A stretch of DNA of 64,000 nucleotides from the IMG/VR virus record IMGVR_UViG_3300032236_000747, positions 290,681-354,680 of that record. One strand, written 5' to 3'. The notes under the pieces were generated by a model. The model was not told the origin of the DNA. It ran no database searches and saw only the letters and a program-made list of their open reading frames with translations. Positions 37,487-50,081 of the stretch are shown here, piece after piece. The translations under genes and the position numbers were made by a program. Each line of letters opens with the position of its first letter. Position 1 is the stretch's first letter.

Positions 37487-37515
37487 TTGACAACATTCCT
37501 TGATTGTTGTATAAT
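37487..37515 (+). promoter_or_regulatory. Sigma70 promoter for the tmRNA precursor
   Basis: TTGACA-N17-TATAAT perfect consensus. Confidence 0.9.
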
Positions 37516-37520
37516 AAAAG

Positions 37521-37586
37521 TTATTGCTGTATGAAGCAAAGAGAAAAGTGTTCTGGACGCGGGTTCGACTCCCGCCAGGTCCACCA
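37521..37586 (+). ncRNA. ssrA: Permuted two-piece tmRNA, acceptor piece
   Basis: T-arm GCGGG-TTCGACT-CCCGC, acceptor 3' strand CAGGTCC-A-CCA. Confidence 0.93.
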
Positions 37587-37597
37587 TAAGGAAGTTT

Positions 37598-37840
37598 GTG
37601 AAAGAGTATTACATAGTTAATGGTAAAAAGTGTAAAAGAGATTCATTGCAAGATGACCTCATTTGGTCCATGAAACAATCCGATAACACTTTCAAACATT
37701 ATTGGATAGACGAACAGCAAGGATTAGGAAACAGTCACGGTGGACAATATATGCCTCCGTGGATTATGAATCGTAATCGTTATGTTGTTGATGATTTTGG
37801 AACGGTTGTAAAATATCTTCCATACAAAGTTTCTTTATGA
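37598..37840 (+). CDS. 80-aa ORF inside the tmRNA intervening segment
   Basis: AAGGA RBS plus GTG right after CCA; stop ends 1 nt before tmRNA G1. Confidence 0.7.
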   Translation: MKEYYIVNGKKCKRDSLQDDLIWSMKQSDNTFKHYWIDEQQGLGNSHGGQYMPPWIMNRNRYVVDDFGTVVKYLPYKVSL

Positions 37841-37841
37841 T

Positions 37842-38030
37842 GGGCCTGCCATGGTTTCGACAGGGCAAAGAGTAACAGAGTGGACAGCAGGGCAAAGCAG
37901 AAGCCCTTAGGGTTGGGGATTCCCGGCCGTAGACGCAAAAAAAGTAAATGCAAACGACTCACAGTTTCTAATGGTTGCCTGATAAAGGCTTCCGGGGTAG
38001 GAAATACCTTGCAACAGAAAATAACAGAAC
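37842..38030 (+). ncRNA. ssrA: Permuted two-piece tmRNA, coding piece; tag ANDSQFLMVA*
   Basis: GGGCCTG pairs with CAGGTCC giving G3.U70; GGTTTCGAC; TAAAT-GCA resume at 37950; TGA TAA at 37980-85; 3' end approximate. Confidence 0.92.
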
Positions 38031-38049
38031 CCGCTTCGGCGGGTTTCTT
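38026..38049. terminator. Bidirectional Rho-independent terminator
   Basis: AACCCGC-TTCG-GCGGGTT between convergent transcripts. Confidence 0.85.
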
Positions 38050-38728
38050 ATGTTTTCTTAGAAGCCCATTGTTTAACTGCTGGATAGTATGTTGTAAACA
38101 GTTGATGACGTTTTTTGATTTCAGCAGCAGGCGCAGCTTTTCCATTAATGGCTCTTGTAACTGAAGCAGTATCAGCAAAGTCCTTTATACGTCTTTTAAC
38201 ATTTTGATCCCAAAACCATTTAGCAATCTTTGCCGCTTCGTGGGGATCTGCTGCCTTACTAGGATGTTCAACATAATATGATTCATCGCCATGCACGCCT
38301 GCGCCAGCAGCAATATAGTTACCCTTGCCTGTTAACTGAATGAATCCACGTCCGGCATATTCCAAAGCATCATTTGCGCCTTGGTTACCTGTGCTACGTG
38401 CATATTTGTGAGCTGCTTTATTAGGCCGACCTATCTCGCCGAGGTGTTTAAAGTTACCTGTTTCTGCGCTACACTGTGCTAGAAACTGTGCTAGTTCTGT
38501 TGGCTCGGTCATACCGCTGTTAATAGCATGTGAAGACAGTATTTTACGTGCTACATCGGCATCAACTTTTGGTGCTTGAACTAGTGGTTGCACTTTTGTA
38601 CTACGTGGATCTATTTTTTGGGGATGTTGAACAGGCTTGGCTTGTGCTATACCTGCTGCCATTGCGGCTGCTCCACCAAGGAATCCCCTGCGTGTTAAAT
38701 CTTCTCTAGTAATTTCGTATATTCGCAT
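38048..38728 (-). CDS. Glycoside hydrolase family 19 (endolysin/chitinase-like) with twin-arginine-like N-terminus
   Basis: FLAQCSAETG and YAGRGFIQLTGKGNY motifs; TRRGFLGG; TAAATA-N4-ATG. Confidence 0.88.
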   Translation of the reverse strand: MRIYEITREDLTRRGFLGGAAAMAAGIAQAKPVQHPQKIDPRSTKVQPLVQAPKVDADVARKILSSHAINSGMTEPTELAQFLAQCSAETGNFKHLGEIGRPNKAAHKYARSTGNQGANDALEYAGRGFIQLTGKGNYIAAGAGVHGDESYYVEHPSKAADPHEAAKIAKWFWDQNVKRRIKDFADTASVTRAINGKAAPAAEIKKRHQLFTTYYPAVKQWASKKT

Positions 38729-42799: not shown

Positions 42800-44998
42800 A
42801 TGATTCTTAACACAGCACCACAAGACCAAGCTATTTTAAGCAACGTCGGTGAAATTGGCGACTTTAAGATTAAAGCAAGTGCCAAGGCATTCAGTATCTT
42901 GAGCTCAGGCTTGTATGCTAACAAGATCCGTGCTATTGTGCGTGAGTTGTCGTGTAATGCGGTAGACAGTCATGTGGCTGCAGGCAAAGAAGAGGTACCG
43001 TTTGAAGTACATTTGCCTAACCAACTTAGTCCACATTTTAGTGTGCGTGACTTTGGTACTGGTTTAAGCCACGAGCAAGTTACACAAATCTATACAACTT
43101 ACTTTGAAAGTACCAAGACTGACAGTAACTCCTTTATTGGTGCATTGGGCCTAGGCTCAAAGAGCCCGTTCTCTTACACAGATAACTTCACTGTTACTGC
43201 TATCAAAGATGGTCGTAAGGGCATTTACTCTGCGTTCATCAACAACGACGGTGTGCCTAGCATTGCGTTGATGATGGAAGAACAAACTGACGAACCAGCA
43301 GGTGTTGAAGTTAAGTTTGCCGTTGAAGATCGCTATGACACTTCTAAGTTTGCTGAAGAAGCTCGTCATGTGTTTATCAACTTCAAGTTGCGTCCAACTA
43401 TCCTAGGTAGCTCAGGATTCCAGTTCTATGAGCGCAAATATGAATCCAAGGACATTATTCCAGGCGTACACAACTTTACTACACGTGGCTATGATAAGAG
43501 TATTGCTGTTATGGGCAATATTGGTTATCCGATCGATGTTCCTAACGCAGAAAAGAATCTAGGTGAACTAGAAAACTTGTTGAGCTGTGGTTTGGAAATG
43601 CACTTTGCTATCGGTGAGCTTGACTTCCAAGCAAGCCGCGAAGGTTTGTCATACATTCCTAGTACCATTGAAGCTATTCGTAAAAAGTTAAAAGATGTTA
43701 ATGAAGCATTAACTGTAGTGTTAGCTAAAGAAGCAGACGCTATTGTTAATCTCTGGGAACGTGCAGACTTTTTGAATCGTCGTTCAAACAACTATCTGTG
43801 GCGAGCCGCTGTTGAGAAATATGTAACTGACTCGAAATTTGAGTTGATTGAAAAGACTCATAACTATTTGCGTACACGAGTATTTGAACTCGGTGTATCC
43901 GATCTGGCATCTAAGTTCAATATTTCATTAAACGGCTTTATCAAACAACAGAGTTATTCAGCTTGTACTAAGATGAGTTCTCACAGCAAGAGCATCGGCC
44001 CTGACCCTGATCGTCCTGGTTATTACCTTACTAAACAAGTGTGGGACGTTAGTGCCAGTTTAGACACGGGCTTTGTAATCAACGATACAAAAGTTGGTGC
44101 CACAGAGCGTGCCAAGTATCATTGGAGAAATACTCCCCGCAAGAATGATGACGGTACAACTATTCCTTCAAATGTCTTTGTGTTAGAAAAAGCTGACCGT
44201 AGTAAAGAAATGAAACTCAAGGAATTCTTTGATTACATTTCTAGTCCACCAACTGCCAATGTCTTTACGGCATCTGATTTGAAGGAAAAGCCACGCCAAA
44301 CATCATCTGCCTTGGGTCGTAATGTTAGCCTAATGCGCATGGAAGAACGTGGCATGGGCGGTTACTATCGTGAAAAGGAAATGGTATGGCGTGATGCTGG
44401 AAAGCTCGACTCTTACGACAATAGCAAGACCTACTACTATTTGCCTTTGAGTGGATACACTGTTCAAAGTGCGTATGGGTACACTAGTGCTACAGAGATG
44501 TATAAAGATCTCAACGAGTGTGGTATCGGTGGTTTGATTCCAGAAACTGTTTTTGGTGTTCGTAAGATCGACATCGAAGCTGTTAAGGCCAAGAAGAACT
44601 GGGTCAACCTTGAAAAGTTTGTTTTGGATAAACTGACCAAGCAGAATCCCAATGATTTGATGTCGTTGGCTGTTAGTGCCATTGACGACTACGAAAGAGT
44701 CAAGTATAATAGTAAGATCGTCAACAAAGTCTCTGATCCTAAGAGTCCGTACTCGGTATTGGCAAATAAGTTCAAAGGCGTAACAGCAAAACGTTACAGT
44801 AGTCATCGTTTGAATAGTGTGTGTTCTAAGTTTATTCCTAAGAACCCTATTAATCCAGACAAGATTATTGCATCGTTTGTTAAAGAATCAAAGGATGTGA
44901 TTGCCCGGTATCCTTTGTTAGAAATCATGCGTTCGGATTCGAAACATGAAGCAGTGGCAGAGTACATTAACATGATTGACGCAAAGAAAGGTGTCTAA
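42800..44998 (+). CDS. rIIA: T4 rIIA-like protein (N-terminal GHKL/HSP90-like ATPase)
   Basis: RELSCNAVDSH, VRDFGTGL, STK, GALGLGSKSPF motifs; adjacent rIIB-like gene. Confidence 0.88.
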   Translation: MILNTAPQDQAILSNVGEIGDFKIKASAKAFSILSSGLYANKIRAIVRELSCNAVDSHVAAGKEEVPFEVHLPNQLSPHFSVRDFGTGLSHEQVTQIYTTYFESTKTDSNSFIGALGLGSKSPFSYTDNFTVTAIKDGRKGIYSAFINNDGVPSIALMMEEQTDEPAGVEVKFAVEDRYDTSKFAEEARHVFINFKLRPTILGSSGFQFYERKYESKDIIPGVHNFTTRGYDKSIAVMGNIGYPIDVPNAEKNLGELENLLSCGLEMHFAIGELDFQASREGLSYIPSTIEAIRKKLKDVNEALTVVLAKEADAIVNLWERADFLNRRSNNYLWRAAVEKYVTDSKFELIEKTHNYLRTRVFELGVSDLASKFNISLNGFIKQQSYSACTKMSSHSKSIGPDPDRPGYYLTKQVWDVSASLDTGFVINDTKVGATERAKYHWRNTPRKNDDGTTIPSNVFVLEKADRSKEMKLKEFFDYISSPPTANVFTASDLKEKPRQTSSALGRNVSLMRMEERGMGGYYREKEMVWRDAGKLDSYDNSKTYYYLPLSGYTVQSAYGYTSATEMYKDLNECGIGGLIPETVFGVRKIDIEAVKAKKNWVNLEKFVLDKLTKQNPNDLMSLAVSAIDDYERVKYNSKIVNKVSDPKSPYSVLANKFKGVTAKRYSSHRLNSVCSKFIPKNPINPDKIIASFVKESKDVIARYPLLEIMRSDSKHEAVAEYINMIDAKKGV

Positions 44999-45232: not shown

Positions 45233-46042
45233 ATGGCATACCCATATTTGATCCAAGGTAAGAACATTGTTGTTGTTATTGGCAATAACAGTCATACTAT
45301 TAACAAGAGTCACATTAACTATCAGAAGGTTCTTGATGCTATTAAAGCTGATGATTGGGACACAGTTAAGAATGTGATTGAACCACAGAAGGTTGTCCTT
45401 AACTATGGCGCTGGCAATATCAGCATCAAAGGTGATGTACTGTATTGGAAGAATGAAGAACTTCATACTAGCCTTACAGTTCGTATCATCGAGATGTTGG
45501 AAGAAGGCTTTCCGATTGAGCCAATGGTTAACTTTATGGAAAACTTGATGTCTAACCCAAGTAAGCGTGCCGTTAGTGAGTTGTATGGTTTCTTGTCAAA
45601 GAATAACTTGCCAATCACTCCAGATGGTCACTTCTTGGCCTACAAGAAAGTACGCGATACTTACTTCGACGTCCACAGCAACACCATGGACAATAGCGTT
45701 GGTAAAGTTCTTGAAATGGAACGTAATCAAGTTGACGATGATCAGAACAATACTTGTTCAACAGGTCTGCACTTCTGTAGTCAAAGCTATTTGAATCACT
45801 TTGGTGGAGAGCGTACAGTTATTGTTAAGATCAATCCACGTGACGTTGTAAGTATTCCTACTGACTACAATGACAGCAAAGGTCGCACTTGCCGCTATGA
45901 AGTTATCGGCGAGTTGGGCGTTGATGCCGACGAAGCGTTTACAGCGCCTGTACAAGAAAATGCCAATCAACCAGTGTTTGATAATGTCAACTACGGTGCT
46001 GGTACTTCAAACATGCCATTTGGTTCTCCAAACGGTGGTTAA
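45233..46042 (+). CDS. rIIB: T4 rIIB-like protein
   Basis: ITPDGHFLAYKKV, MERNQVDDD, CSTGLHFCS, VKINPRDVVSIPTDYN..KGRTCRYEV. Confidence 0.88.
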   Translation: MAYPYLIQGKNIVVVIGNNSHTINKSHINYQKVLDAIKADDWDTVKNVIEPQKVVLNYGAGNISIKGDVLYWKNEELHTSLTVRIIEMLEEGFPIEPMVNFMENLMSNPSKRAVSELYGFLSKNNLPITPDGHFLAYKKVRDTYFDVHSNTMDNSVGKVLEMERNQVDDDQNNTCSTGLHFCSQSYLNHFGGERTVIVKINPRDVVSIPTDYNDSKGRTCRYEVIGELGVDADEAFTAPVQENANQPVFDNVNYGAGTSNMPFGSPNGG

Positions 46043-46065: not shown

Positions 46066-46338
46066 ATGTTGTAAAAGGACAGCGCGGTAAGGTTGGCGCC
46101 CGTGGCAAAATGTAACTCGGATTCCATAGGATGCGGCGATGCTTAAATGCTCCCCGAGGTAGAATATGCCTAAGTTACGATCAACCCTTCCAGCAGTCGG
46201 GAAAAAGCGAAAACGCGAAAGCGGTCAGTAAAGGTTGGCAAATATGGACAAGGCACCCGCTTTTAGGAACCCCCATATAACCGTTGTAAAACTGGCAAGT
46301 GAGGTTACCACCGGTCAAATCCAAGACTGCTACAACAT
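46066..46338 (+). ncRNA. Candidate large (about 270 nt) structured RNA of unknown class
   Basis: ORF-free, GC-rich; terminal stem ATGTTGTA/TACAACAT and nested long-range stems. Confidence 0.65.
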
Positions 46339-46357
46339 ATTTTGAATAATAAATCAC

Positions 46358-46415
46358 TTTACAACGTGATTAAATGATAGTATAATAAATACATACAGCA
46401 AAGAGATAGACTCTG
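46358..46415 (+). promoter_or_regulatory. Composite sigma70/late promoter plus GAUAGAC-loop leader hairpin
   Basis: TTTACA-N17-TATAAT overlapping TAAATA; AATCAC-N8-GTGATT palindrome; AGAG-ATAGA-CTCT hairpin. Confidence 0.7.
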
Positions 46416-46441
46416 AGCACATTTATACAAAGGATTTTTGT

Positions 46442-47461
46442 ATGTCAAAACAATATAACACTCTAGTCCTCATCGGACGTTTTCAACCCTTACACAATGC
46501 TCACCTTGAGATTATCAAGCGAGCCACAGCACTTACAGATGAACTAGTTATCATCGCTGGTAGCGCAAACCAACCACGTACTTATAAGAACCCGTTTACG
46601 TTTGATGAGCGTGTTGCAATGATCAAGGCTGCTACTAGCGGTTTAGCAATGCGGGTCCATGTTGAATCTAACATTGATACTATCTATAATGATCAAGCAT
46701 GGGCAGTTCGTATCCAAAGCATTGTTAGCAAGTACCGTGTCCTAGGTGGTCGTACTGCTGTTATCGGTCATAAGAAAGATGCTAGCTCATTCTACTTGGA
46801 TATGTTCCCCCAATGGGAATACGTAGATGTAGAAAAGATCGAGCCACTGGGTGCCACTGACATCCGAGACTTGTACTTCAAACAAAGTTTCAACAGCAAC
46901 TTTATTAAGAATGTTGTTCCAACTACTACCTACGACTTCTTAATGGAATTCCGCCAAACCGAAGAGTTCCAACAAATCATTCGTGAGCGTGAGTTCGTCG
47001 AAACCTACAAGAAGCAGTATGCTAGTTTGCCATATCCTCCAATCTTCAGTACTGCTGACGCTGTTGTTATTCAAAGCGGCCACGTGCTAATGATTAAACG
47101 TAGAGCAGAGCCAGGTAAGGGCCTGTGGGCATTGCCAGGTGGTTACGTTAACGCTAACACAGACCGTACAGTAGAAGATGCCGCTATCCGTGAACTCCGT
47201 GAGGAAACAATGATTAAGGTGCCTGCGCCTGTACTGCGTGGCAACATTGTTCGCAGTAAAGTATTTGATGCTATTGACCGTAGCCCACGTGGACGCATTA
47301 TTACACACGCCTTCTTTATCCAACTGCCAGATGGTGAGTTGCCTCGAGTAAAAGGTAGCGACGATGCTGAGAAAGCACGTTGGGTTCCGATCGCAGAGGT
47401 CAAATCAGAGGAATGCTTTGAAGACCACTACGAAATCATTCAACACTTTCTTGGAGCATAA
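46442..47461 (+). CDS. natV: Bifunctional NMN adenylyltransferase / Nudix ADP-ribose pyrophosphatase (NadM-Nudix)
   Basis: GRFQPLHNAH (HxGH-like), GSAN..KNPF, GATDIR; Nudix box GGYV..EDAAIRELREETM. Confidence 0.95.
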   Translation: MSKQYNTLVLIGRFQPLHNAHLEIIKRATALTDELVIIAGSANQPRTYKNPFTFDERVAMIKAATSGLAMRVHVESNIDTIYNDQAWAVRIQSIVSKYRVLGGRTAVIGHKKDASSFYLDMFPQWEYVDVEKIEPLGATDIRDLYFKQSFNSNFIKNVVPTTTYDFLMEFRQTEEFQQIIREREFVETYKKQYASLPYPPIFSTADAVVIQSGHVLMIKRRAEPGKGLWALPGGYVNANTDRTVEDAAIRELREETMIKVPAPVLRGNIVRSKVFDAIDRSPRGRIITHAFFIQLPDGELPRVKGSDDAEKARWVPIAEVKSEECFEDHYEIIQHFLGA

Positions 47462-47462
47462 T

Positions 47463-47792
47463 ATGAACTGGAAAGTTAAAATCAAGCTAGATGATATTAC
47501 ATACGGTCCTAAAGATGAAGAACTCGACGAGCTGACTGTAATGACCTTTGCTCATGAACTTATGAAGCAAGGCTATCGCAAGACCAGTAATGCCTACTGC
47601 ATGGTTAGTCGCATTGATCGTAAAGATTGGGTAGAAGTTATGGCTAAAGAGCGTCACTGTAGTGTAGCAGACTTTTACAATCTAGACGGTAGCGGAATAA
47701 GAGACAGCCACCGTGATCATTATATTCGTTGTTTCAGCAACGACACACTAACTGTGCATCCGTTGATTCACAGAAAAATGAAAGGTTATTAA
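47463..47792 (+). CDS. Hypothetical protein
   Basis: ATG after GGAG; 109 aa. Confidence 0.7.
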   Translation: MNWKVKIKLDDITYGPKDEELDELTVMTFAHELMKQGYRKTSNAYCMVSRIDRKDWVEVMAKERHCSVADFYNLDGSGIRDSHRDHYIRCFSNDTLTVHPLIHRKMKGY

Positions 47793-47943
47793 AATGAAAG
47801 ATAAGATAGACATAGCGGTTTTTATCTGTTTATTTGTAGCTCTCTATGTTAACCTAACAAGTATTCCTAAGAAAGAATATCCTCGAGAAGTGCGTGGAGC
47901 ATTGATAAGATTAGAAACAAAATGAAAGGTTATTAAAATGAAA
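47775..47943 (+). repeat. Pair of 25-bp direct repeats (47775-47799, 47919-47943) flanking a 43-aa ORF
   Basis: AAAATGAAAGGTTATTAAAATGAAA twice. Confidence 0.9.
47794..47925 (+). CDS. Small membrane protein (43 aa)
   Basis: MKDKIDIAVFICLFVALYVNLTSIPKK... Confidence 0.55.
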   Translation: MKDKIDIAVFICLFVALYVNLTSIPKKEYPREVRGALIRLETK

Positions 47944-48129
47944 TTTATTTTAGTTGCGTATTTGATATCAGGCGTACCTAGTACAGGAATGTCTATTAAC
48001 TGGGAAGTCAAGGGTGATTATGACACAAGGGCTGAATGTATCTACGCAAGATCACAGTTGATTAAATCTGTTCAAACAGGACCTAAGAAAAAATACGAAT
48101 GCCACGCCATGGAGGTAAGTGTAGAATGA
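47938..48129 (+). CDS. Small hypothetical protein with two Cys
   Basis: 63 aa; hydrophobic N-terminus. Confidence 0.6.
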   Translation: MKFILVAYLISGVPSTGMSINWEVKGDYDTRAECIYARSQLIKSVQTGPKKKYECHAMEVSVE

Positions 48130-48605
48130 CACTAAAGCACACAAAAGGTAATCTCCTCAACCTAGCAGAAGCAGGCGAGTTTGATGTTGTGGTACAAGGC
48201 TGTAATTGCTTTAACACAATGGGTGGTGGTATTGCTCGAGAGATTCGCGAACGCTATCCTCATGTAGCCGCAGTAGACAGCAAAACTGTTCGCGGTGACT
48301 ACAACAAGTTAGGCACGTGGACCAGTGAAAATGTTATTGTAAAAAATGGTACAGTTACATTTGATATTATCAACGCCTACACTCAATACAATATGAGTAC
48401 AGGTGAAGATGTATTTGAGTATACTGCTTTCTTGTTGATTCTAGAAAAACTTTTATACGCTCACGGCGATAAACGAATTGGCTTGCCATACATTGGTATG
48501 GGACTAGCAGGTGGTGATCGAGAAACGATCATTCCGATGATTGAGGAATTTGCCTACCGTGTTGCTGATAAAGGTGGTACAGTCACTTTGGTAGAATTTG
48601 GTTGA
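48126..48605 (+). CDS. Macrodomain (ADP-ribose binding/hydrolase) protein
   Basis: KGNLL..DVVVQGCNCFNTMGGGIA..IINAYTQ..LPYIGMGLAGG; ATGA-coupled start. Confidence 0.9.
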   Translation: MTLKHTKGNLLNLAEAGEFDVVVQGCNCFNTMGGGIAREIRERYPHVAAVDSKTVRGDYNKLGTWTSENVIVKNGTVTFDIINAYTQYNMSTGEDVFEYTAFLLILEKLLYAHGDKRIGLPYIGMGLAGGDRETIIPMIEEFAYRVADKGGTVTLVEFG

Positions 48606-48659
48606 CACAATAATGATGTTGTGTTATGCTGATAACAAGTCCACTAGATAGACTGGTGG
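48602..48659 (+). promoter_or_regulatory. Sigma70 promoter plus GAUAGAC-loop leader hairpin
   Basis: TTGACA-N17-TATGCT with TG extension; ACACAA-N8-TTGTGT palindrome; CCACTAG-ATAGA-CTGGTGG. Confidence 0.75.
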
Positions 48660-48683
48660 CATTTTAAATAAAGGAACTTTATT

Positions 48684-50081
48684 ATGAAACTCGCAAAAAA
48701 CATTATTCTGAACACTGACTCATACAAAGTGAGCATGTTCAAACAATACCCAGCAGGTACTACAGGTGTATATTCTTACATTGAATCACGAGGCGGACGT
48801 TACGATCAGACAGTATTCTTCGGACTCCAAGCGTTCATTAAAGAGTACTTACTCGACCCCATCACACAGGCAGACATTGATGTGGCTGACGAAATCCTTA
48901 CCGCGCACGGTGAGCCTTTCAACCGAGCAGGATGGCAATACATTCTTGACAAGCACAATGGACGCCTCCCAGTTGTCATTCGGGCCGTCCCTGAAGGAAC
49001 ACTTGTACCTGTCAAAAACGTACTCGCTACTATTGAAAACACTGACCCAGAATGCTTCTGGTTAACTACTTGGCTTGAAACAGCCTTGCTTCGTGCTATT
49101 TGGTATCCTACCACAGTAGCTACTCAATCTTACACAATCAAGAAAGTTATTCTTGACTATTTGGAGAAAACAGGTGAAACTAGTACAATCAATTTTAAAC
49201 TGCACGATTTCGGTGCTCGTGGTGTATCTAGCTTTGAGTCAGCGGGCATCGGAGGCGCAGCACACTTGGTTAACTTCATGGGTAGTGATACTATTTCTGG
49301 TGTTCTTTATGCTCGTGAATACTATGATGCTGGGATTGCAGGTTTTAGTATCCCTGCCGCCGAGCACTCAACAATCACTAGTTGGGGCCGTGCTGGTGAA
49401 GTCGATGCCTACAGAAACATGCTCAAACAGTTTGGACGAGAAGGATCAATCTTCGCAGTTGTCTCCGACAGTTACGACATTTTCAATGCCGCAAGCAAAC
49501 TCTGGGGTGAAGAACTCCGAGATGAAGTAATCGCTAGCGGAGCAACAGTTGTTATTCGACCAGACAGCGGTGATCCTGTTACTGTTAACCGTCAGTTGAT
49601 TGCTATCTTAGATCAAAAGTTTGGACACACAGTTAACAGCAAAGGATTCAAAGTCCTTAACAATGTTCGCCTCATTCAAGGAGATGGTGTAAATGAACTT
49701 ACTATTCGCGGGATTCTGGGTGCTTTTATGGCTCTTGGGTATAGTGCTGATAATATTGCTTTTGGCATGGGTGGAGCGTTGTTGCAAATCGTGGACCGCG
49801 ACACACAACGATTCGCAATGAAGTGCAGTTCCATGCAAGTGGGCGATAAGTGGGTAGATGTACAAAAAGATCCAATCACTGACGCCGGTAAGAAGTCTAA
49901 AGCAGGTAGTGTAACTCTTTGGGAGAGCGGTGGAGAATGGGTAAGTGCTGTTGATCAACCAAAAGGTTGGACAGATAAAGGATTTGGCCCATTCACCGAA
50001 ATGCTTGAAGAAGTTTACCGTGATGGTCGCCTAATCAAAGAAATTACTTTTGACCAGGTTCGGGCAAACAGCAATAAATAA
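48684..50081 (+). CDS. nadV: Nicotinamide phosphoribosyltransferase (NAMPT)
   Basis: TDSYKVS, LHDFGARG, IPAAEHSTIT, VVSDSYD, VVIRPDSGDP, LIQGDGV motifs. Confidence 0.97.
   Translation: MKLAKNIILNTDSYKVSMFKQYPAGTTGVYSYIESRGGRYDQTVFFGLQAFIKEYLLDPITQADIDVADEILTAHGEPFNRAGWQYILDKHNGRLPVVIRAVPEGTLVPVKNVLATIENTDPECFWLTTWLETALLRAIWYPTTVATQSYTIKKVILDYLEKTGETSTINFKLHDFGARGVSSFESAGIGGAAHLVNFMGSDTISGVLYAREYYDAGIAGFSIPAAEHSTITSWGRAGEVDAYRNMLKQFGREGSIFAVVSDSYDIFNAASKLWGEELRDEVIASGATVVIRPDSGDPVTVNRQLIAILDQKFGHTVNSKGFKVLNNVRLIQGDGVNELTIRGILGAFMALGYSADNIAFGMGGALLQIVDRDTQRFAMKCSSMQVGDKWVDVQKDPITDAGKKSKAGSVTLWESGGEWVSAVDQPKGWTDKGFGPFTEMLEEVYRDGRLIKEITFDQVRANSNK

What the first reader, a model, noticed from the sequence alone, without database searches (positions are those of the whole stretch)
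46396..48659. Same GAUAGAC-loop hairpin in the leaders of both NAD salvage genes
Seen: just after each promoter, AGAG-ATAGA-CTCT (46402-14, natV) and CCACTAG-ATAGA-CTGGTGG (48641-59, nadV). The stems differ but the G-AUAGA-C loop is identical, which is the signature of a conserved RNA operator. I did not notice it in other leaders. Each promoter also overlaps a 6-N8-6 palindrome of different sequence. Inference: co-regulation of phage NAD salvage by an RNA-binding protein (possibly the Nudix or macrodomain protein sensing ADP-ribose/NAD) or a minimal metabolite-responsive element.
Basis: partly seen in the sequence, partly recalled or inferred. Interest (0 to 1): 0.7.

Follow-up and report, generated by a model that had tools for sequence, protein, structure and literature searches.

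The report
Conserved RNA hairpin before NAD-salvage genes
The two matching hairpins are real and belong to an apparently undescribed, strongly conserved two-hairpin RNA leader that sits only in front of the two NAD-salvage genes (natV/nadM and nadV) in this jumbo phage, in many related phages and in many proteobacteria, so it is very probably the control element of that pathway.

Summary
Observation confirmed at the stated coordinates. Each hairpin (H1: variable stem, loop AUAGA closed by G-C) starts 3-5 nt after a sigma70-like promoter. An SD/AUG-containing hairpin (H2) follows, with the loop about 38 nt from the ATG.

A covariance model finds only these two sites in the 354,680-bp genome (30.1 and 29.4 bits; next 13.7).

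The element recurs in 70 of 96 nadV and 54 of 79 natV leaders of related IMG/VR phages, with abundant compensatory stem changes. It is also in the cultured Xanthomonas phages LucasX and RTH11 and in bacterial natV(nadM-Nudix)-nadV operons of Lysobacterales, Burkholderiaceae and Caulobacter. Five bacterial genomes each give exactly two strong hits, one before each gene. Loop consensus is G-[R N W G A]-C.

It has no Rfam 15 match, and I found no paper describing it.

It is a sense-strand RNA, not a DNA operator, and it is not phage-specific: it travels with the gene cassette.

Mechanism is inferred. The most likely reading is a translational operator bound by a cassette-encoded protein, with NatV the best candidate. 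A minimal riboswitch is the main rival. Neither binding partner could be tested here.

The parts
46358..46386 (+). sigma70-like promoter of natV (TTTACA-17-TATAAT); the inverted repeat AATCAC/GTGATT (46352-46371) brackets the -35
   Evidence: 11 of 12 matches; sequence
46398..46418 (+). H1 of the natV leader: outer GC/GC pair, 2x2 internal loop (AA/GA), 4-bp stem AGAG/CUCU, loop AUAGA (46406-46410) closed by G46405-C46411
   Evidence: -6.0 kcal/mol, 98% of the ensemble; 30.1 bits; R2 41.7 bits
46424..46444 (+). H2 of the natV leader: 8-bp hairpin UAUACAAA/UUUGUAUG with GGAUU in the loop. It holds the SD (AAAGGA, 46429-46434) and all of the AUG (46442-46444)
   Evidence: covariation of the homologous helix
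46442..47461 (+). natV: bifunctional NMN adenylyltransferase (NadM type) + Nudix ADP-ribose pyrophosphatase, 339 aa
   Evidence: PF01467 + PF00293; end-to-end match to 2QJO, E 2.6e-93
47463..48605 (+). Four intervening ORFs, not part of the conserved element: 109 aa (phrog_8098), 43 aa, 63 aa, and 159 aa at 48126-48605 (macro-like, phrog_335)
48602..48630 (+). sigma70-like promoter of nadV (TTGACA-17-TATGCT, with TG before the -10); the inverted repeat ACACAA/TTGTGT (48605-48624) lies in the spacer
   Evidence: for the covarying spacer repeat in relatives
48641..48659 (+). H1 of the nadV leader: 7-bp stem CCACUAG/CUGGUGG (one G-U), loop AUAGA (48648-48652) closed by G48647-C48653
   Evidence: -9.3 kcal/mol; 29.4 bits; R2 35.2 bits
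48667..48683 (+). H2 of the nadV leader: 7-bp hairpin AAUAAAG/CUUUAUU with loop GAA. It contains the SD and ends directly at the ATG (48684)
48684..50081 (+). nadV: nicotinamide phosphoribosyltransferase, 465 aa
   Evidence: PF04095 + PF18127

Best explanation
Shown:
- Each NAD-salvage cistron carries a bipartite 5' leader RNA.
- H1 is a stable hairpin whose stem sequence is free but whose apical pentaloop (consensus R-N-W-G-A, here AUAGA) and closing G-C pair are fixed.
- After a short unstructured linker comes H2, a weaker hairpin that holds the Shine-Dalgarno sequence and abuts or includes the start codon.
- The H1 loop lies 37-43 nt before the start codon in most leaders.
- The element occurs only before natV (or the first gene of its operon) and nadV, in phages and in bacteria.

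Inferred:
- H1 is the recognition site of a translational operator.
- A trans-acting factor that travels with the cassette binds the loop. The best candidate is the NadM-Nudix enzyme NatV itself, acting like other metabolic enzymes that bind their own mRNA when free of substrate.
- Binding either occludes the standby/linker region or stabilises H2, lowering translation of both enzymes.
- Accumulation of substrates after NAD+ breakdown (NMN/ATP, ADP-ribose) would release the RNA and raise expression.

My probabilities:
- functional sense-strand cis-regulatory RNA specific to natV/nadV: about 0.9;
- read by a protein rather than a small molecule: about 0.5;
- that protein being NatV: about 0.3.
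For: It is RNA and it is conserved:
- 77% of stem cells are paired against 53% in shuffles, covariation score 0.52 against 0.14, and 0 of 500 shuffles reach it. Sliding the partner destroys the signal.
- Both helices are supported on 118 leaders: 84% paired, H2 94%.
- G-U pairs are frequent and every copy lies on the gene strand.

Specific to the two genes:
- two strong hits in the own genome;
- two in each of 5 large relatives, with the extra weak hits inside ORFs;
- the two best hits in the 305-kb LucasX genome;
- exactly two hits of 24-54 bits in each of 5 bacterial genomes of 4-9 Mb, the next at 20 bits or less;
- one further genome among 150 sampled Pseudomonadota, again with two hits.

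Tied to translation:
- H1 is kept where nadV follows natV without a promoter.
- Loop-to-start distance is 37-43 nt in 147 of 165 leaders.
- H2 holds the SD and AUG.

Protein-like recognition:
- Only about 5-7 fixed nucleotides, all apical.
- No pseudoknot partner for the loop.
- H1 and H2 coexist in the ensemble, so no switch is predicted.
- Rare deviant loops are shared by both leaders of one genome: Variovorax GUUGA in both, and BcepSauron an AAGA tetraloop in both.

Portable factor, NatV favoured:
- The cassette plus leader moves between alpha-, beta- and gamma-proteobacteria and phages.
- nadV has H1 in 50 of 57 bacterial loci with natV upstream, but in 1 of 23 without it (Fisher p 1e-12).
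- Phages whose NadV is still about 83% identical but whose NatV is replaced by a 33%-identical type carry a different loop (G-GUAGU-C or G-GCAGU-C) before natV and no H1 before nadV.
- No regulator gene flanks the Xanthomonas operon.
Against: - No binding was tested. The complex prediction was not run by the tool.
- NatV aligns end to end with Synechocystis NadM-Nudix and has no extra RNA-binding domain. To my knowledge no RNA binding is known for this family.
- The natV-H1 association may be phylogenetic or due to physical linkage, because leader and gene can be exchanged together.
- One phage with a B-type NatV (L207) seems to have an AUAGA loop, and L218 has GAUAGAC with yet another NatV type. 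Loop type therefore does not track NatV type cleanly.
- Positions 1-3 of the loop vary even within a genome (RTH11, L302).
- Several phages with both genes have no H1 (RsoM2USA, ACP17, X1).
- No transcript data exist for this phage.
Confidence: 0.45

Rival explanations
1. Minimal riboswitch. The H1 loop, alone or docked on H2, binds a universal metabolite of the pathway (NAD+, NMN, ADP-ribose, nicotinamide or PRPP) and changes how accessible the SD/AUG hairpin is.
For: - It is a metabolic-gene leader with an invariant core across alpha-, beta- and gamma-proteobacteria and phages, and it keeps working after horizontal transfer. A universal ligand would explain that.
- Each cistron has its own copy next to an SD hairpin.
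- From my own knowledge, very small riboswitches exist: guanidine-II has two hairpins with conserved loops, and preQ1-I is about 34 nt.
- Two NAD+ riboswitch classes are already known, each with a narrow gene association (abstract of PMC6859854 for nadA).
Against: - Only a pentaloop and its closing pair are conserved. There is no conserved internal loop, junction or tail.
- No covarying partner for the loop.
- No mutually exclusive structure with H2.
- Loop positions 1-3 vary, and whole loop classes differ between lineages: GYAGU, GUUGA, AAGA.
- Never found before other NAD genes.
- Absent from nadV loci that lack natV.
- No match to the nadA, pnuC or any other Rfam model.
Confidence: 0.2
2. 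Structural mRNA element without a dedicated sensor. H1 acts as a 5'-terminal or processing-defined stabiliser hairpin, or as a standby-site organiser, that sets mRNA half-life and translation efficiency of both cistrons. The conserved loop is read by general machinery such as the ribosome or S1, RNase E, or another universal RNA-binding protein.
For: - H1 starts 3-5 nt from the predicted 5' end in promoter-proximal copies.
- It is followed by an AU- or pyrimidine-rich single-stranded linker and then a structured ribosome-binding site.
- The H2-type SD hairpin also occurs without H1, in other phages and before other early genes.
Against: - A mere stabiliser would not need an invariant loop, nor a fixed distance to the start codon.
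- General machinery would not explain restriction to two genes per genome.
Confidence: 0.15
3. boxB-like antitermination site. The pentaloop hairpin in the nascent leader recruits an N-like protein that modifies RNA polymerase.
For: - Two promoter-proximal hairpins per genome.
- A purine-rich pentaloop on a variable stem, with loop classes differing between lineages. This resembles lambda, P22 and phi21 nut sites (my own knowledge). The loop variant GUAGA differs from lambda nutL GAAGA at one position.
Against: - It is present in bacterial chromosomal operons and between natV and nadV with fixed spacing to the AUG.
- No conserved boxA-like sequence appears in the alignments.
- The T-run after the window's nadV H1 is not conserved, so there is no terminator to read through.
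Confidence: 0.05
4. Double-stranded DNA operator (palindrome) for an NrtR/NiaR/NadR-type transcription factor.
For: - NAD genes, including nadM-nadV in Synechocystis, are controlled by NrtR at palindromic DNA sites (PMC2330246).
- H1 lies next to promoters.
Against: - The half-site sequences are not conserved; only their complementarity is.
- G-U pairs are tolerated and the conserved centre is asymmetric.
- It is strictly strand-specific.
- It occurs between cistrons without a promoter.
- No regulator gene lies next to the operon.
Confidence: 0.03

Closest known systems
PyrR binding loops of the pyr operon (Rfam RF00515)
   Same: - A conserved hairpin is repeated before successive cistrons of one nucleotide-metabolism operon.
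- It is read by a protein encoded in that operon, an enzyme homologue whose RNA binding is tuned by pathway nucleotides.
- Recognition centres on a purine-rich apical loop.
(All from my own knowledge.)
   Different: - PyrR works by transcription attenuation through anti-antiterminator choice; here the partner structure is an SD/AUG hairpin.
- The loop sequence differs.
- No Rfam match.
- The binding protein here is unproven.
Translational operators of phages and bacteria (MS2 coat-protein hairpin, T4 gp43 operator, ThrRS operator)
   Same: - A short hairpin with free stem sequence and a fixed loop.
- It sits beside the ribosome-binding site, about -45 to -25 from the AUG.
- In those systems a protein competes with the 30S subunit. 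(My own knowledge.)
   Different: - Different loops and proteins.
- Here two cistrons share the operator, and the element is spread through bacteria and phages by transfer of the cassette.
Guanidine-II (mini-ykkC) riboswitch
   Same: Two small hairpins, with conservation confined to the loops and closing pairs, and the second hairpin at the ribosome-binding site. It shows that a minimal hairpin element can sense a metabolite. (My own knowledge.)
   Different: - Both mini-ykkC loops are the same ACGR and kiss each other.
- Here the second loop is just the SD, no loop-loop complementarity was found, and there is no Rfam match.
NAD+ riboswitches class I (nadA motif) and class II (pnuC motif)
   Same: Leader RNAs with a narrow association to a single NAD-pathway gene.
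   Different: - No covariance-model match.
- Those aptamers have bulged stems or pseudoknots with many conserved nucleotides.
- Different taxa (Acidobacteria, Streptococcus) and different genes.
lambda-type boxB (nut) hairpins
   Same: A purine-rich pentaloop on a short variable stem, two sites per genome just after early promoters, and lineage-specific loop classes.
   Different: - No boxA.
- Fixed spacing to a start codon.
- Present in bacterial operons.
- The first loop base is mostly A rather than G.
NrtR / NadR / NiaR regulons
   Same: Dedicated control of NAD salvage genes, including nadM-nadV and nadV. In those systems Nudix or NMNAT folds serve as sensor modules.
   Different: Those are DNA-binding transcription factors with sequence-conserved palindromes (PMC2330246). 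This element is an RNA structure.

Membership tests
Rfam NAD+-I (nadA) / NAD+-II (pnuC) riboswitches | Match to the family covariance model (sequence plus structure) | tested here: not met
   cmscan of window 46300-48750 at E up to 10, and of five bacterial loci at E up to 1: no match to any of 4227 families
PyrR binding site (RF00515) | Match to the family covariance model | tested here: not met
   No Rfam match
Riboswitch (generic) | Conserved aptamer core beyond a simple loop (junction, internal loop or pseudoknot) | tested here: not met
   Only the pentaloop core and closing pair are conserved; no covarying partner for the loop
Riboswitch (generic) | Expression platform mutually exclusive with the aptamer | tested here: not met
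   H1 and H2 are both in the minimum-energy fold; P(H1) is 0.99 across 158 leaders
Riboswitch (generic) | Direct, selective binding of a small molecule | not testable with these tools
   Needs in-line probing or ITC
Protein-bound translational operator | Structured site with covarying stem and fixed loop adjacent to the ribosome-binding site | tested here: met
   covariation; 37-43 nt to the start codon; SD/AUG hairpin
Protein-bound translational operator | Specific binding of a protein that lowers translation | not testable with these tools
   The complex-prediction job for NatV plus H1 was not folded; EMSA and toeprinting are needed
lambda-type nut site (boxA + boxB) | GNRA-like pentaloop G-A-A-R-A, with boxA upstream | tested here: not met
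   Loop consensus is R-N-W-G-A, with A first in 142 of 158 leaders; no conserved upstream box in the alignments
lambda-type nut site (boxA + boxB) | Cognate N-like arginine-rich antiterminator encoded by the phage | not tested
   No search was made. The presence of the element in bacterial chromosomal operons argues against it
NrtR-type DNA operator | Sequence-conserved palindromic half-sites recognised in duplex DNA | tested here: not met
   Half-sites vary freely with compensatory changes and G-U pairs; the element is strand-specific
Intrinsic terminator | GC-rich hairpin followed by a conserved U-tract | tested here: not met
   The scan flags the window's nadV H1, but the T-run is absent in most homologous leaders

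The most novel reading that the evidence does not exclude
The element is a new class of NAD-pathway control RNA. One possibility is the first case of an NAD-salvage enzyme (NadM-Nudix/NatV) acting as an RNA-binding autoregulator. The other is a third, minimal NAD-related riboswitch class. Jumbo phages would have captured it together with the genes, so that their NAD+-reconstitution counter-defence is switched on in proportion to NAD+ breakdown in the infected cell.
Probability: 0.55. Interest if true: 0.85.

Novelty: new variant of a known kind. Interest (0 to 1): 0.75.

Why it matters
- NadV plus NatV is the two-enzyme route by which phages rebuild NAD+ after NAD-depleting bacterial defences, and by which many proteobacteria recycle nicotinamide.
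- How this operon is regulated in Lysobacterales, Burkholderiaceae, Caulobacter and these phages is, as far as I could find, undescribed. The NrtR study does not cover them.
- A compact leader of about 55 nt that is specific to exactly these two genes gives a directly testable handle on that regulation.
- Cultured systems are available: Xanthomonas with phages LucasX or RTH11, Lysobacter, Caulobacter and Burkholderia.
- It could reveal either a new moonlighting RNA-binding enzyme or an unusually small sensor RNA.
- It is also an example of a phage importing a host regulatory RNA together with auxiliary metabolic genes.

Tried and rejected
- **Chance:** rejected by model scores and conservation.
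- **Known RNA family:** no Rfam 15 hit for the phage or the bacterial versions. Six literature searches found no description.
- **Pseudoknot between the loop and downstream sequence:** mutual information and complementarity scans found only diffuse compositional signal. The conserved UUAU before H2 in natV leaders is better explained as pairing with the AUG.
- **H1/H2 alternative pairing:** not predicted.
- **Terminator:** the T-run is not conserved.
- **Phage-encoded CsrA or RegA as partner:** no homologue in the genome.
- **Small ORFs that follow H1 in some relatives** (108, 119, 124 and 67 aa) as regulator: no Pfam match and no homologue in this genome.
- **Macro-like ORF as partner:** not co-conserved with the element.
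- **NatV plus H1 complex prediction:** the tool did not fold it. This is evidence neither for nor against binding.
- **RNA-seq evidence:** only DNA metagenome runs (freshwater or aquatic) hold the sequence, so no reads were laid.
- **R1 on large GC-rich genomes:** gave coding-region false positives. The bipartite model R2 solved this.
- **Two fold calls on Variovorax L276:** I used wrong coordinates and ignore them. The sequences stand.
Full report
**1. The observation**

The window is the last 64 kb of a single 354,680-bp virus record with 40% G+C. This is a jumbo phage from a freshwater or aquatic metagenome; only DNA runs hold it. In this window all ORFs of 250 aa or more lie on the + strand.

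- Homologues of rIIA (42800-44998) and rIIB (45233-46042) precede the region.
- natV (46442-47461) is a NadM-type NMN adenylyltransferase fused to a Nudix domain.
- nadV (48684-50081) is a nicotinamide phosphoribosyltransferase.

Each starts 3-5 nt after a strong sigma70-like promoter. The two 6-N8-6 palindromes at the promoters are also there.

GATAGAC is over-represented in the window, 13 copies against 5.6 expected. The other eleven copies have no stem and lie in coding sequence.

**2. Conservation in related phages**

Protein-guided scans of IMG/VR gave 80 loci with NadV at 76-85% identity and 80 with NatV at 74-88%.

- GATAGAC in a hairpin is present in 70 of 96 distinct nadV leaders and 54 of 79 distinct natV leaders.
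- Stems differ freely, for example CCUAGAG/CUCUAGG, CCCCACG/CGUGGGG and CCUCAGG/CCAGAGG.
- On 92 distinct copies, 77% of stem cells pair against 53% after shuffling. The covariation score is 0.52 against 0.14, reached by 0 of 500 shuffles, and sliding the partner abolishes it.
- The pair next to the closing G-C is AU 39, CG 31, GC 12, UA 4.
- G-U pairs are common, and nearly all copies are on the gene strand: 259 GATAGAC on + mostly with a stem, 58 on - nearly all without. It is therefore a sense-strand RNA structure, not a duplex operator.
- H1 persists where nadV follows natV directly without a promoter. There the natV stop codon lies in its 5' arm, so it is not a promoter feature.
- In some relatives H1 instead heads an operon of a small unknown ORF followed by natV.

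**3. A second helix**

RNAalifold on 118 leaders returns two hairpins: H1, and H2, which holds the Shine-Dalgarno sequence in its loop and 5' arm and ends at or inside the start codon.

- H2 is 94% paired and four of its six pairs show double changes.
- In the window, H2 of natV pairs all three bases of the AUG. H2 of nadV ends one base before it.
- The distance from the closing G of H1 to the start codon is 37-43 nt in 147 of 165 leaders.

**4. Specificity**

- Model R1 (H1 alone) finds two hits in the own genome at 30.1 and 29.4 bits, with the next at 13.7.
- It finds two strong hits in each of five relatives of 220-300 kb. Their weaker extra hits lie inside ORFs, without promoter or H2.

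**5. Beyond this phage group**

- The cultured Xanthomonas jumbo phages LucasX and RTH11 have the same leader before both genes. In LucasX these are the two best hits in 305 kb.
- Bacterial loci with NadV at 55-69% identity give model hits only on the + strand, at two fixed places before a nadM-Nudix gene and before nadV. The taxa are Xanthomonas, Lysobacter, Stenotrophomonas, Luteimonas, Dyella, Caulobacter, Burkholderia/Paraburkholderia, Ralstonia, and Thiotrichaceae and Methylococcaceae MAGs.
- A bipartite model R2, built from 118 phage and bacterial leaders, gives exactly two strong hits of 24-54 bits about 1.1 kb apart in each of five bacterial genomes of 4.2-8.8 Mb. Nothing else exceeds 20 bits.
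- In 150 evenly drawn Pseudomonadota, one more genome matches, again with two adjacent hits.
- Bacterial loops are GACAGAC 42, GAUAGAC 30, GAAAGAC 5, GAGAGAC 2 and GGUAGAC 1. Rare variants have U at the third loop position. The core is therefore G-[R N W G A]-C.
- nadV has H1 in 50 of 57 loci where natV lies upstream and in 1 of 23 where it does not.
- The Xanthomonas operon has no adjacent regulator gene.

**6. Evolution**

In a NadV tree:

- LucasX and RTH11 nest inside the clade of Lysobacterales-type bacteria, as do Caulobacter and a Xanthobacteraceae MAG. The cassette with its leader is therefore horizontally mobile.
- The window's NadV sits in a phage clade.
- Within that clade, phages with a replaced NatV are interleaved with the window's type. 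Their NatV is only 33% identical but has the same two-domain architecture.
- Those phages carry the same leader architecture before natV but with loop G-GUAGU-C or G-GCAGU-C. They have no H1 before nadV, even where nadV has its own promoter and H2.

Other deviant classes are shared by both leaders of one genome:

- GUUGA in a Variovorax;
- an AAGA tetraloop closed by C-G in Burkholderia phage BcepSauron.

Several phages with both genes lack H1 and keep only an H2-like SD hairpin: RsoM2USA, ACP17 and X1. RAS14, XacN1, Xoo-sp13 and D479 have nadV without a nearby natV, and they also lack H1.

**7. What it is not**

- It matches none of the 4227 Rfam 15 families, in either the phage or the bacterial version.
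- Six full-text searches found no paper describing it. The NrtR study does not treat these taxa.
- It is not a terminator, because the T-run is not conserved.
- It is not a palindromic DNA operator.
- No pseudoknot partner for the loop was found.
- H1 and H2 are predicted to coexist: P(H1) is 0.99, and the median H2 energy is -3.7 kcal/mol in phages and -8.0 in bacteria. This is not a classical switch architecture.

**8. Mechanism (inference)**

The fixed spacing to the start codon, the per-cistron copies and the SD/AUG hairpin all point to control of translation initiation.

It is therefore either encoded in the cassette, or a universal metabolite, or universal machinery.

Four observations favour a protein encoded by the cassette:

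- the very small, purely apical conserved core;
- lineage-specific loop classes shared by both leaders of a genome;
- the absence of a switch structure;
- the tie to natV presence.

NatV is the best candidate. It would repress both mRNAs when unliganded and release them when NAD+ breakdown products accumulate.

Against this:

- NatV has no extra domain relative to the solved Synechocystis enzyme.
- Loop type does not track NatV type perfectly.
- Nothing about binding could be computed, because the complex job was not folded.

A minimal riboswitch is the main rival. A stabiliser or standby element read by general machinery comes third.

**9. Verdict**

The identity of the trans-acting partner is open.

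The element appears to be an undescribed cis-regulatory RNA motif with ready experimental systems.

Noticed in passing
window 48602-48630 and 46352-46386; relatives L005, L097, L060, L130, L143, L092, L145: The promoter spacers of nadV (and some natV) promoters in relatives contain a covarying inverted repeat, TTG-ACnnnn / loop a(a/g)u(a/g)gg / nnnnGT-TATACT. Some natV promoters have GC-rich hairpins with a UUCG loop between -35 and -10, or repeats bracketing the -10. The mean best repeat is 5.2 bp against 4.1 in shuffles. These may be terminator or 3'-end hairpins of the upstream unit overlapping the promoter.
   Followed up: partly
L003, L006, L008, L013, L021, L027, L036, L039, L052, L056, L070, L072, L073, L077 (about 40 nt before natV): A group of phages with near-identical NadV but a 33%-identical NatV has the same leader architecture with loop G-GUAGU-C or G-GCAGU-C, and no H1 before nadV.
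   Followed up: partly
L349:868-930 and L349:2424-2488 (Burkholderia phage BcepSauron): Both the natV-like and the nadV leaders fold into a hairpin with an AAGA tetraloop closed by C-G, followed by an identical SD hairpin GCAAC-AGGA-GUUGC. This may be a further variant of the motif.
   Followed up: partly
L113:3673-3999, L119:3642-4001, L086:3096-3470, L111:3805-4008: In some relatives H1 precedes a small ORF (108, 119, 124 or 67 aa) that heads the natV operon. None has a Pfam match or a homologue in the window's genome. The 108-aa protein has a Cys/His-rich motif.
   Followed up: partly
window 47770-47800 and 47913-47943: The translation initiation regions of the two small ORFs (47794-47925 and 47938-48129) are a near-identical repeat of about 25 nt, AAAATGAAAGGTTATTAAAATGAAA, each forming a small SD hairpin (AATGA-AAGG-TTATT).
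   Followed up: no
window 37494-38073: ARAGORN calls a 580-nt permuted tmRNA-like gene with tag peptide AKKVNANDSQFLMVA. It is the only tRNA or tmRNA call in the window.
   Followed up: no
window 48126-48605: This 159-aa ORF (phrog_335, 'phosphatase') has weak similarity to Poa1p-type ADP-ribose 1''-phosphate phosphatase and to the YmdB macro protein. It sits between natV and nadV in many relatives but not in bacteria.
   Followed up: partly
L233 (Bacillaceae MAG contig, 5.6 kb) and L234 (Methylococcaceae MAG contig, 289,642 bp): These 'bacterial' contigs carry phage-like leaders, and their NadV groups with the phage clade in the tree. They may be jumbo-phage contigs binned into MAGs.
   Followed up: no
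genome positions 60968 (+), 256498 (-) and 253148 (-), outside the window: A few other genes directly after sigma70-like promoters also have an SD-in-hairpin abutting the ATG, for example TGCGTAC-AAGGAG-GTACGCA-ATG. H2-type hairpins are therefore not exclusive to the NAD genes, whereas H1 is.
   Followed up: partly
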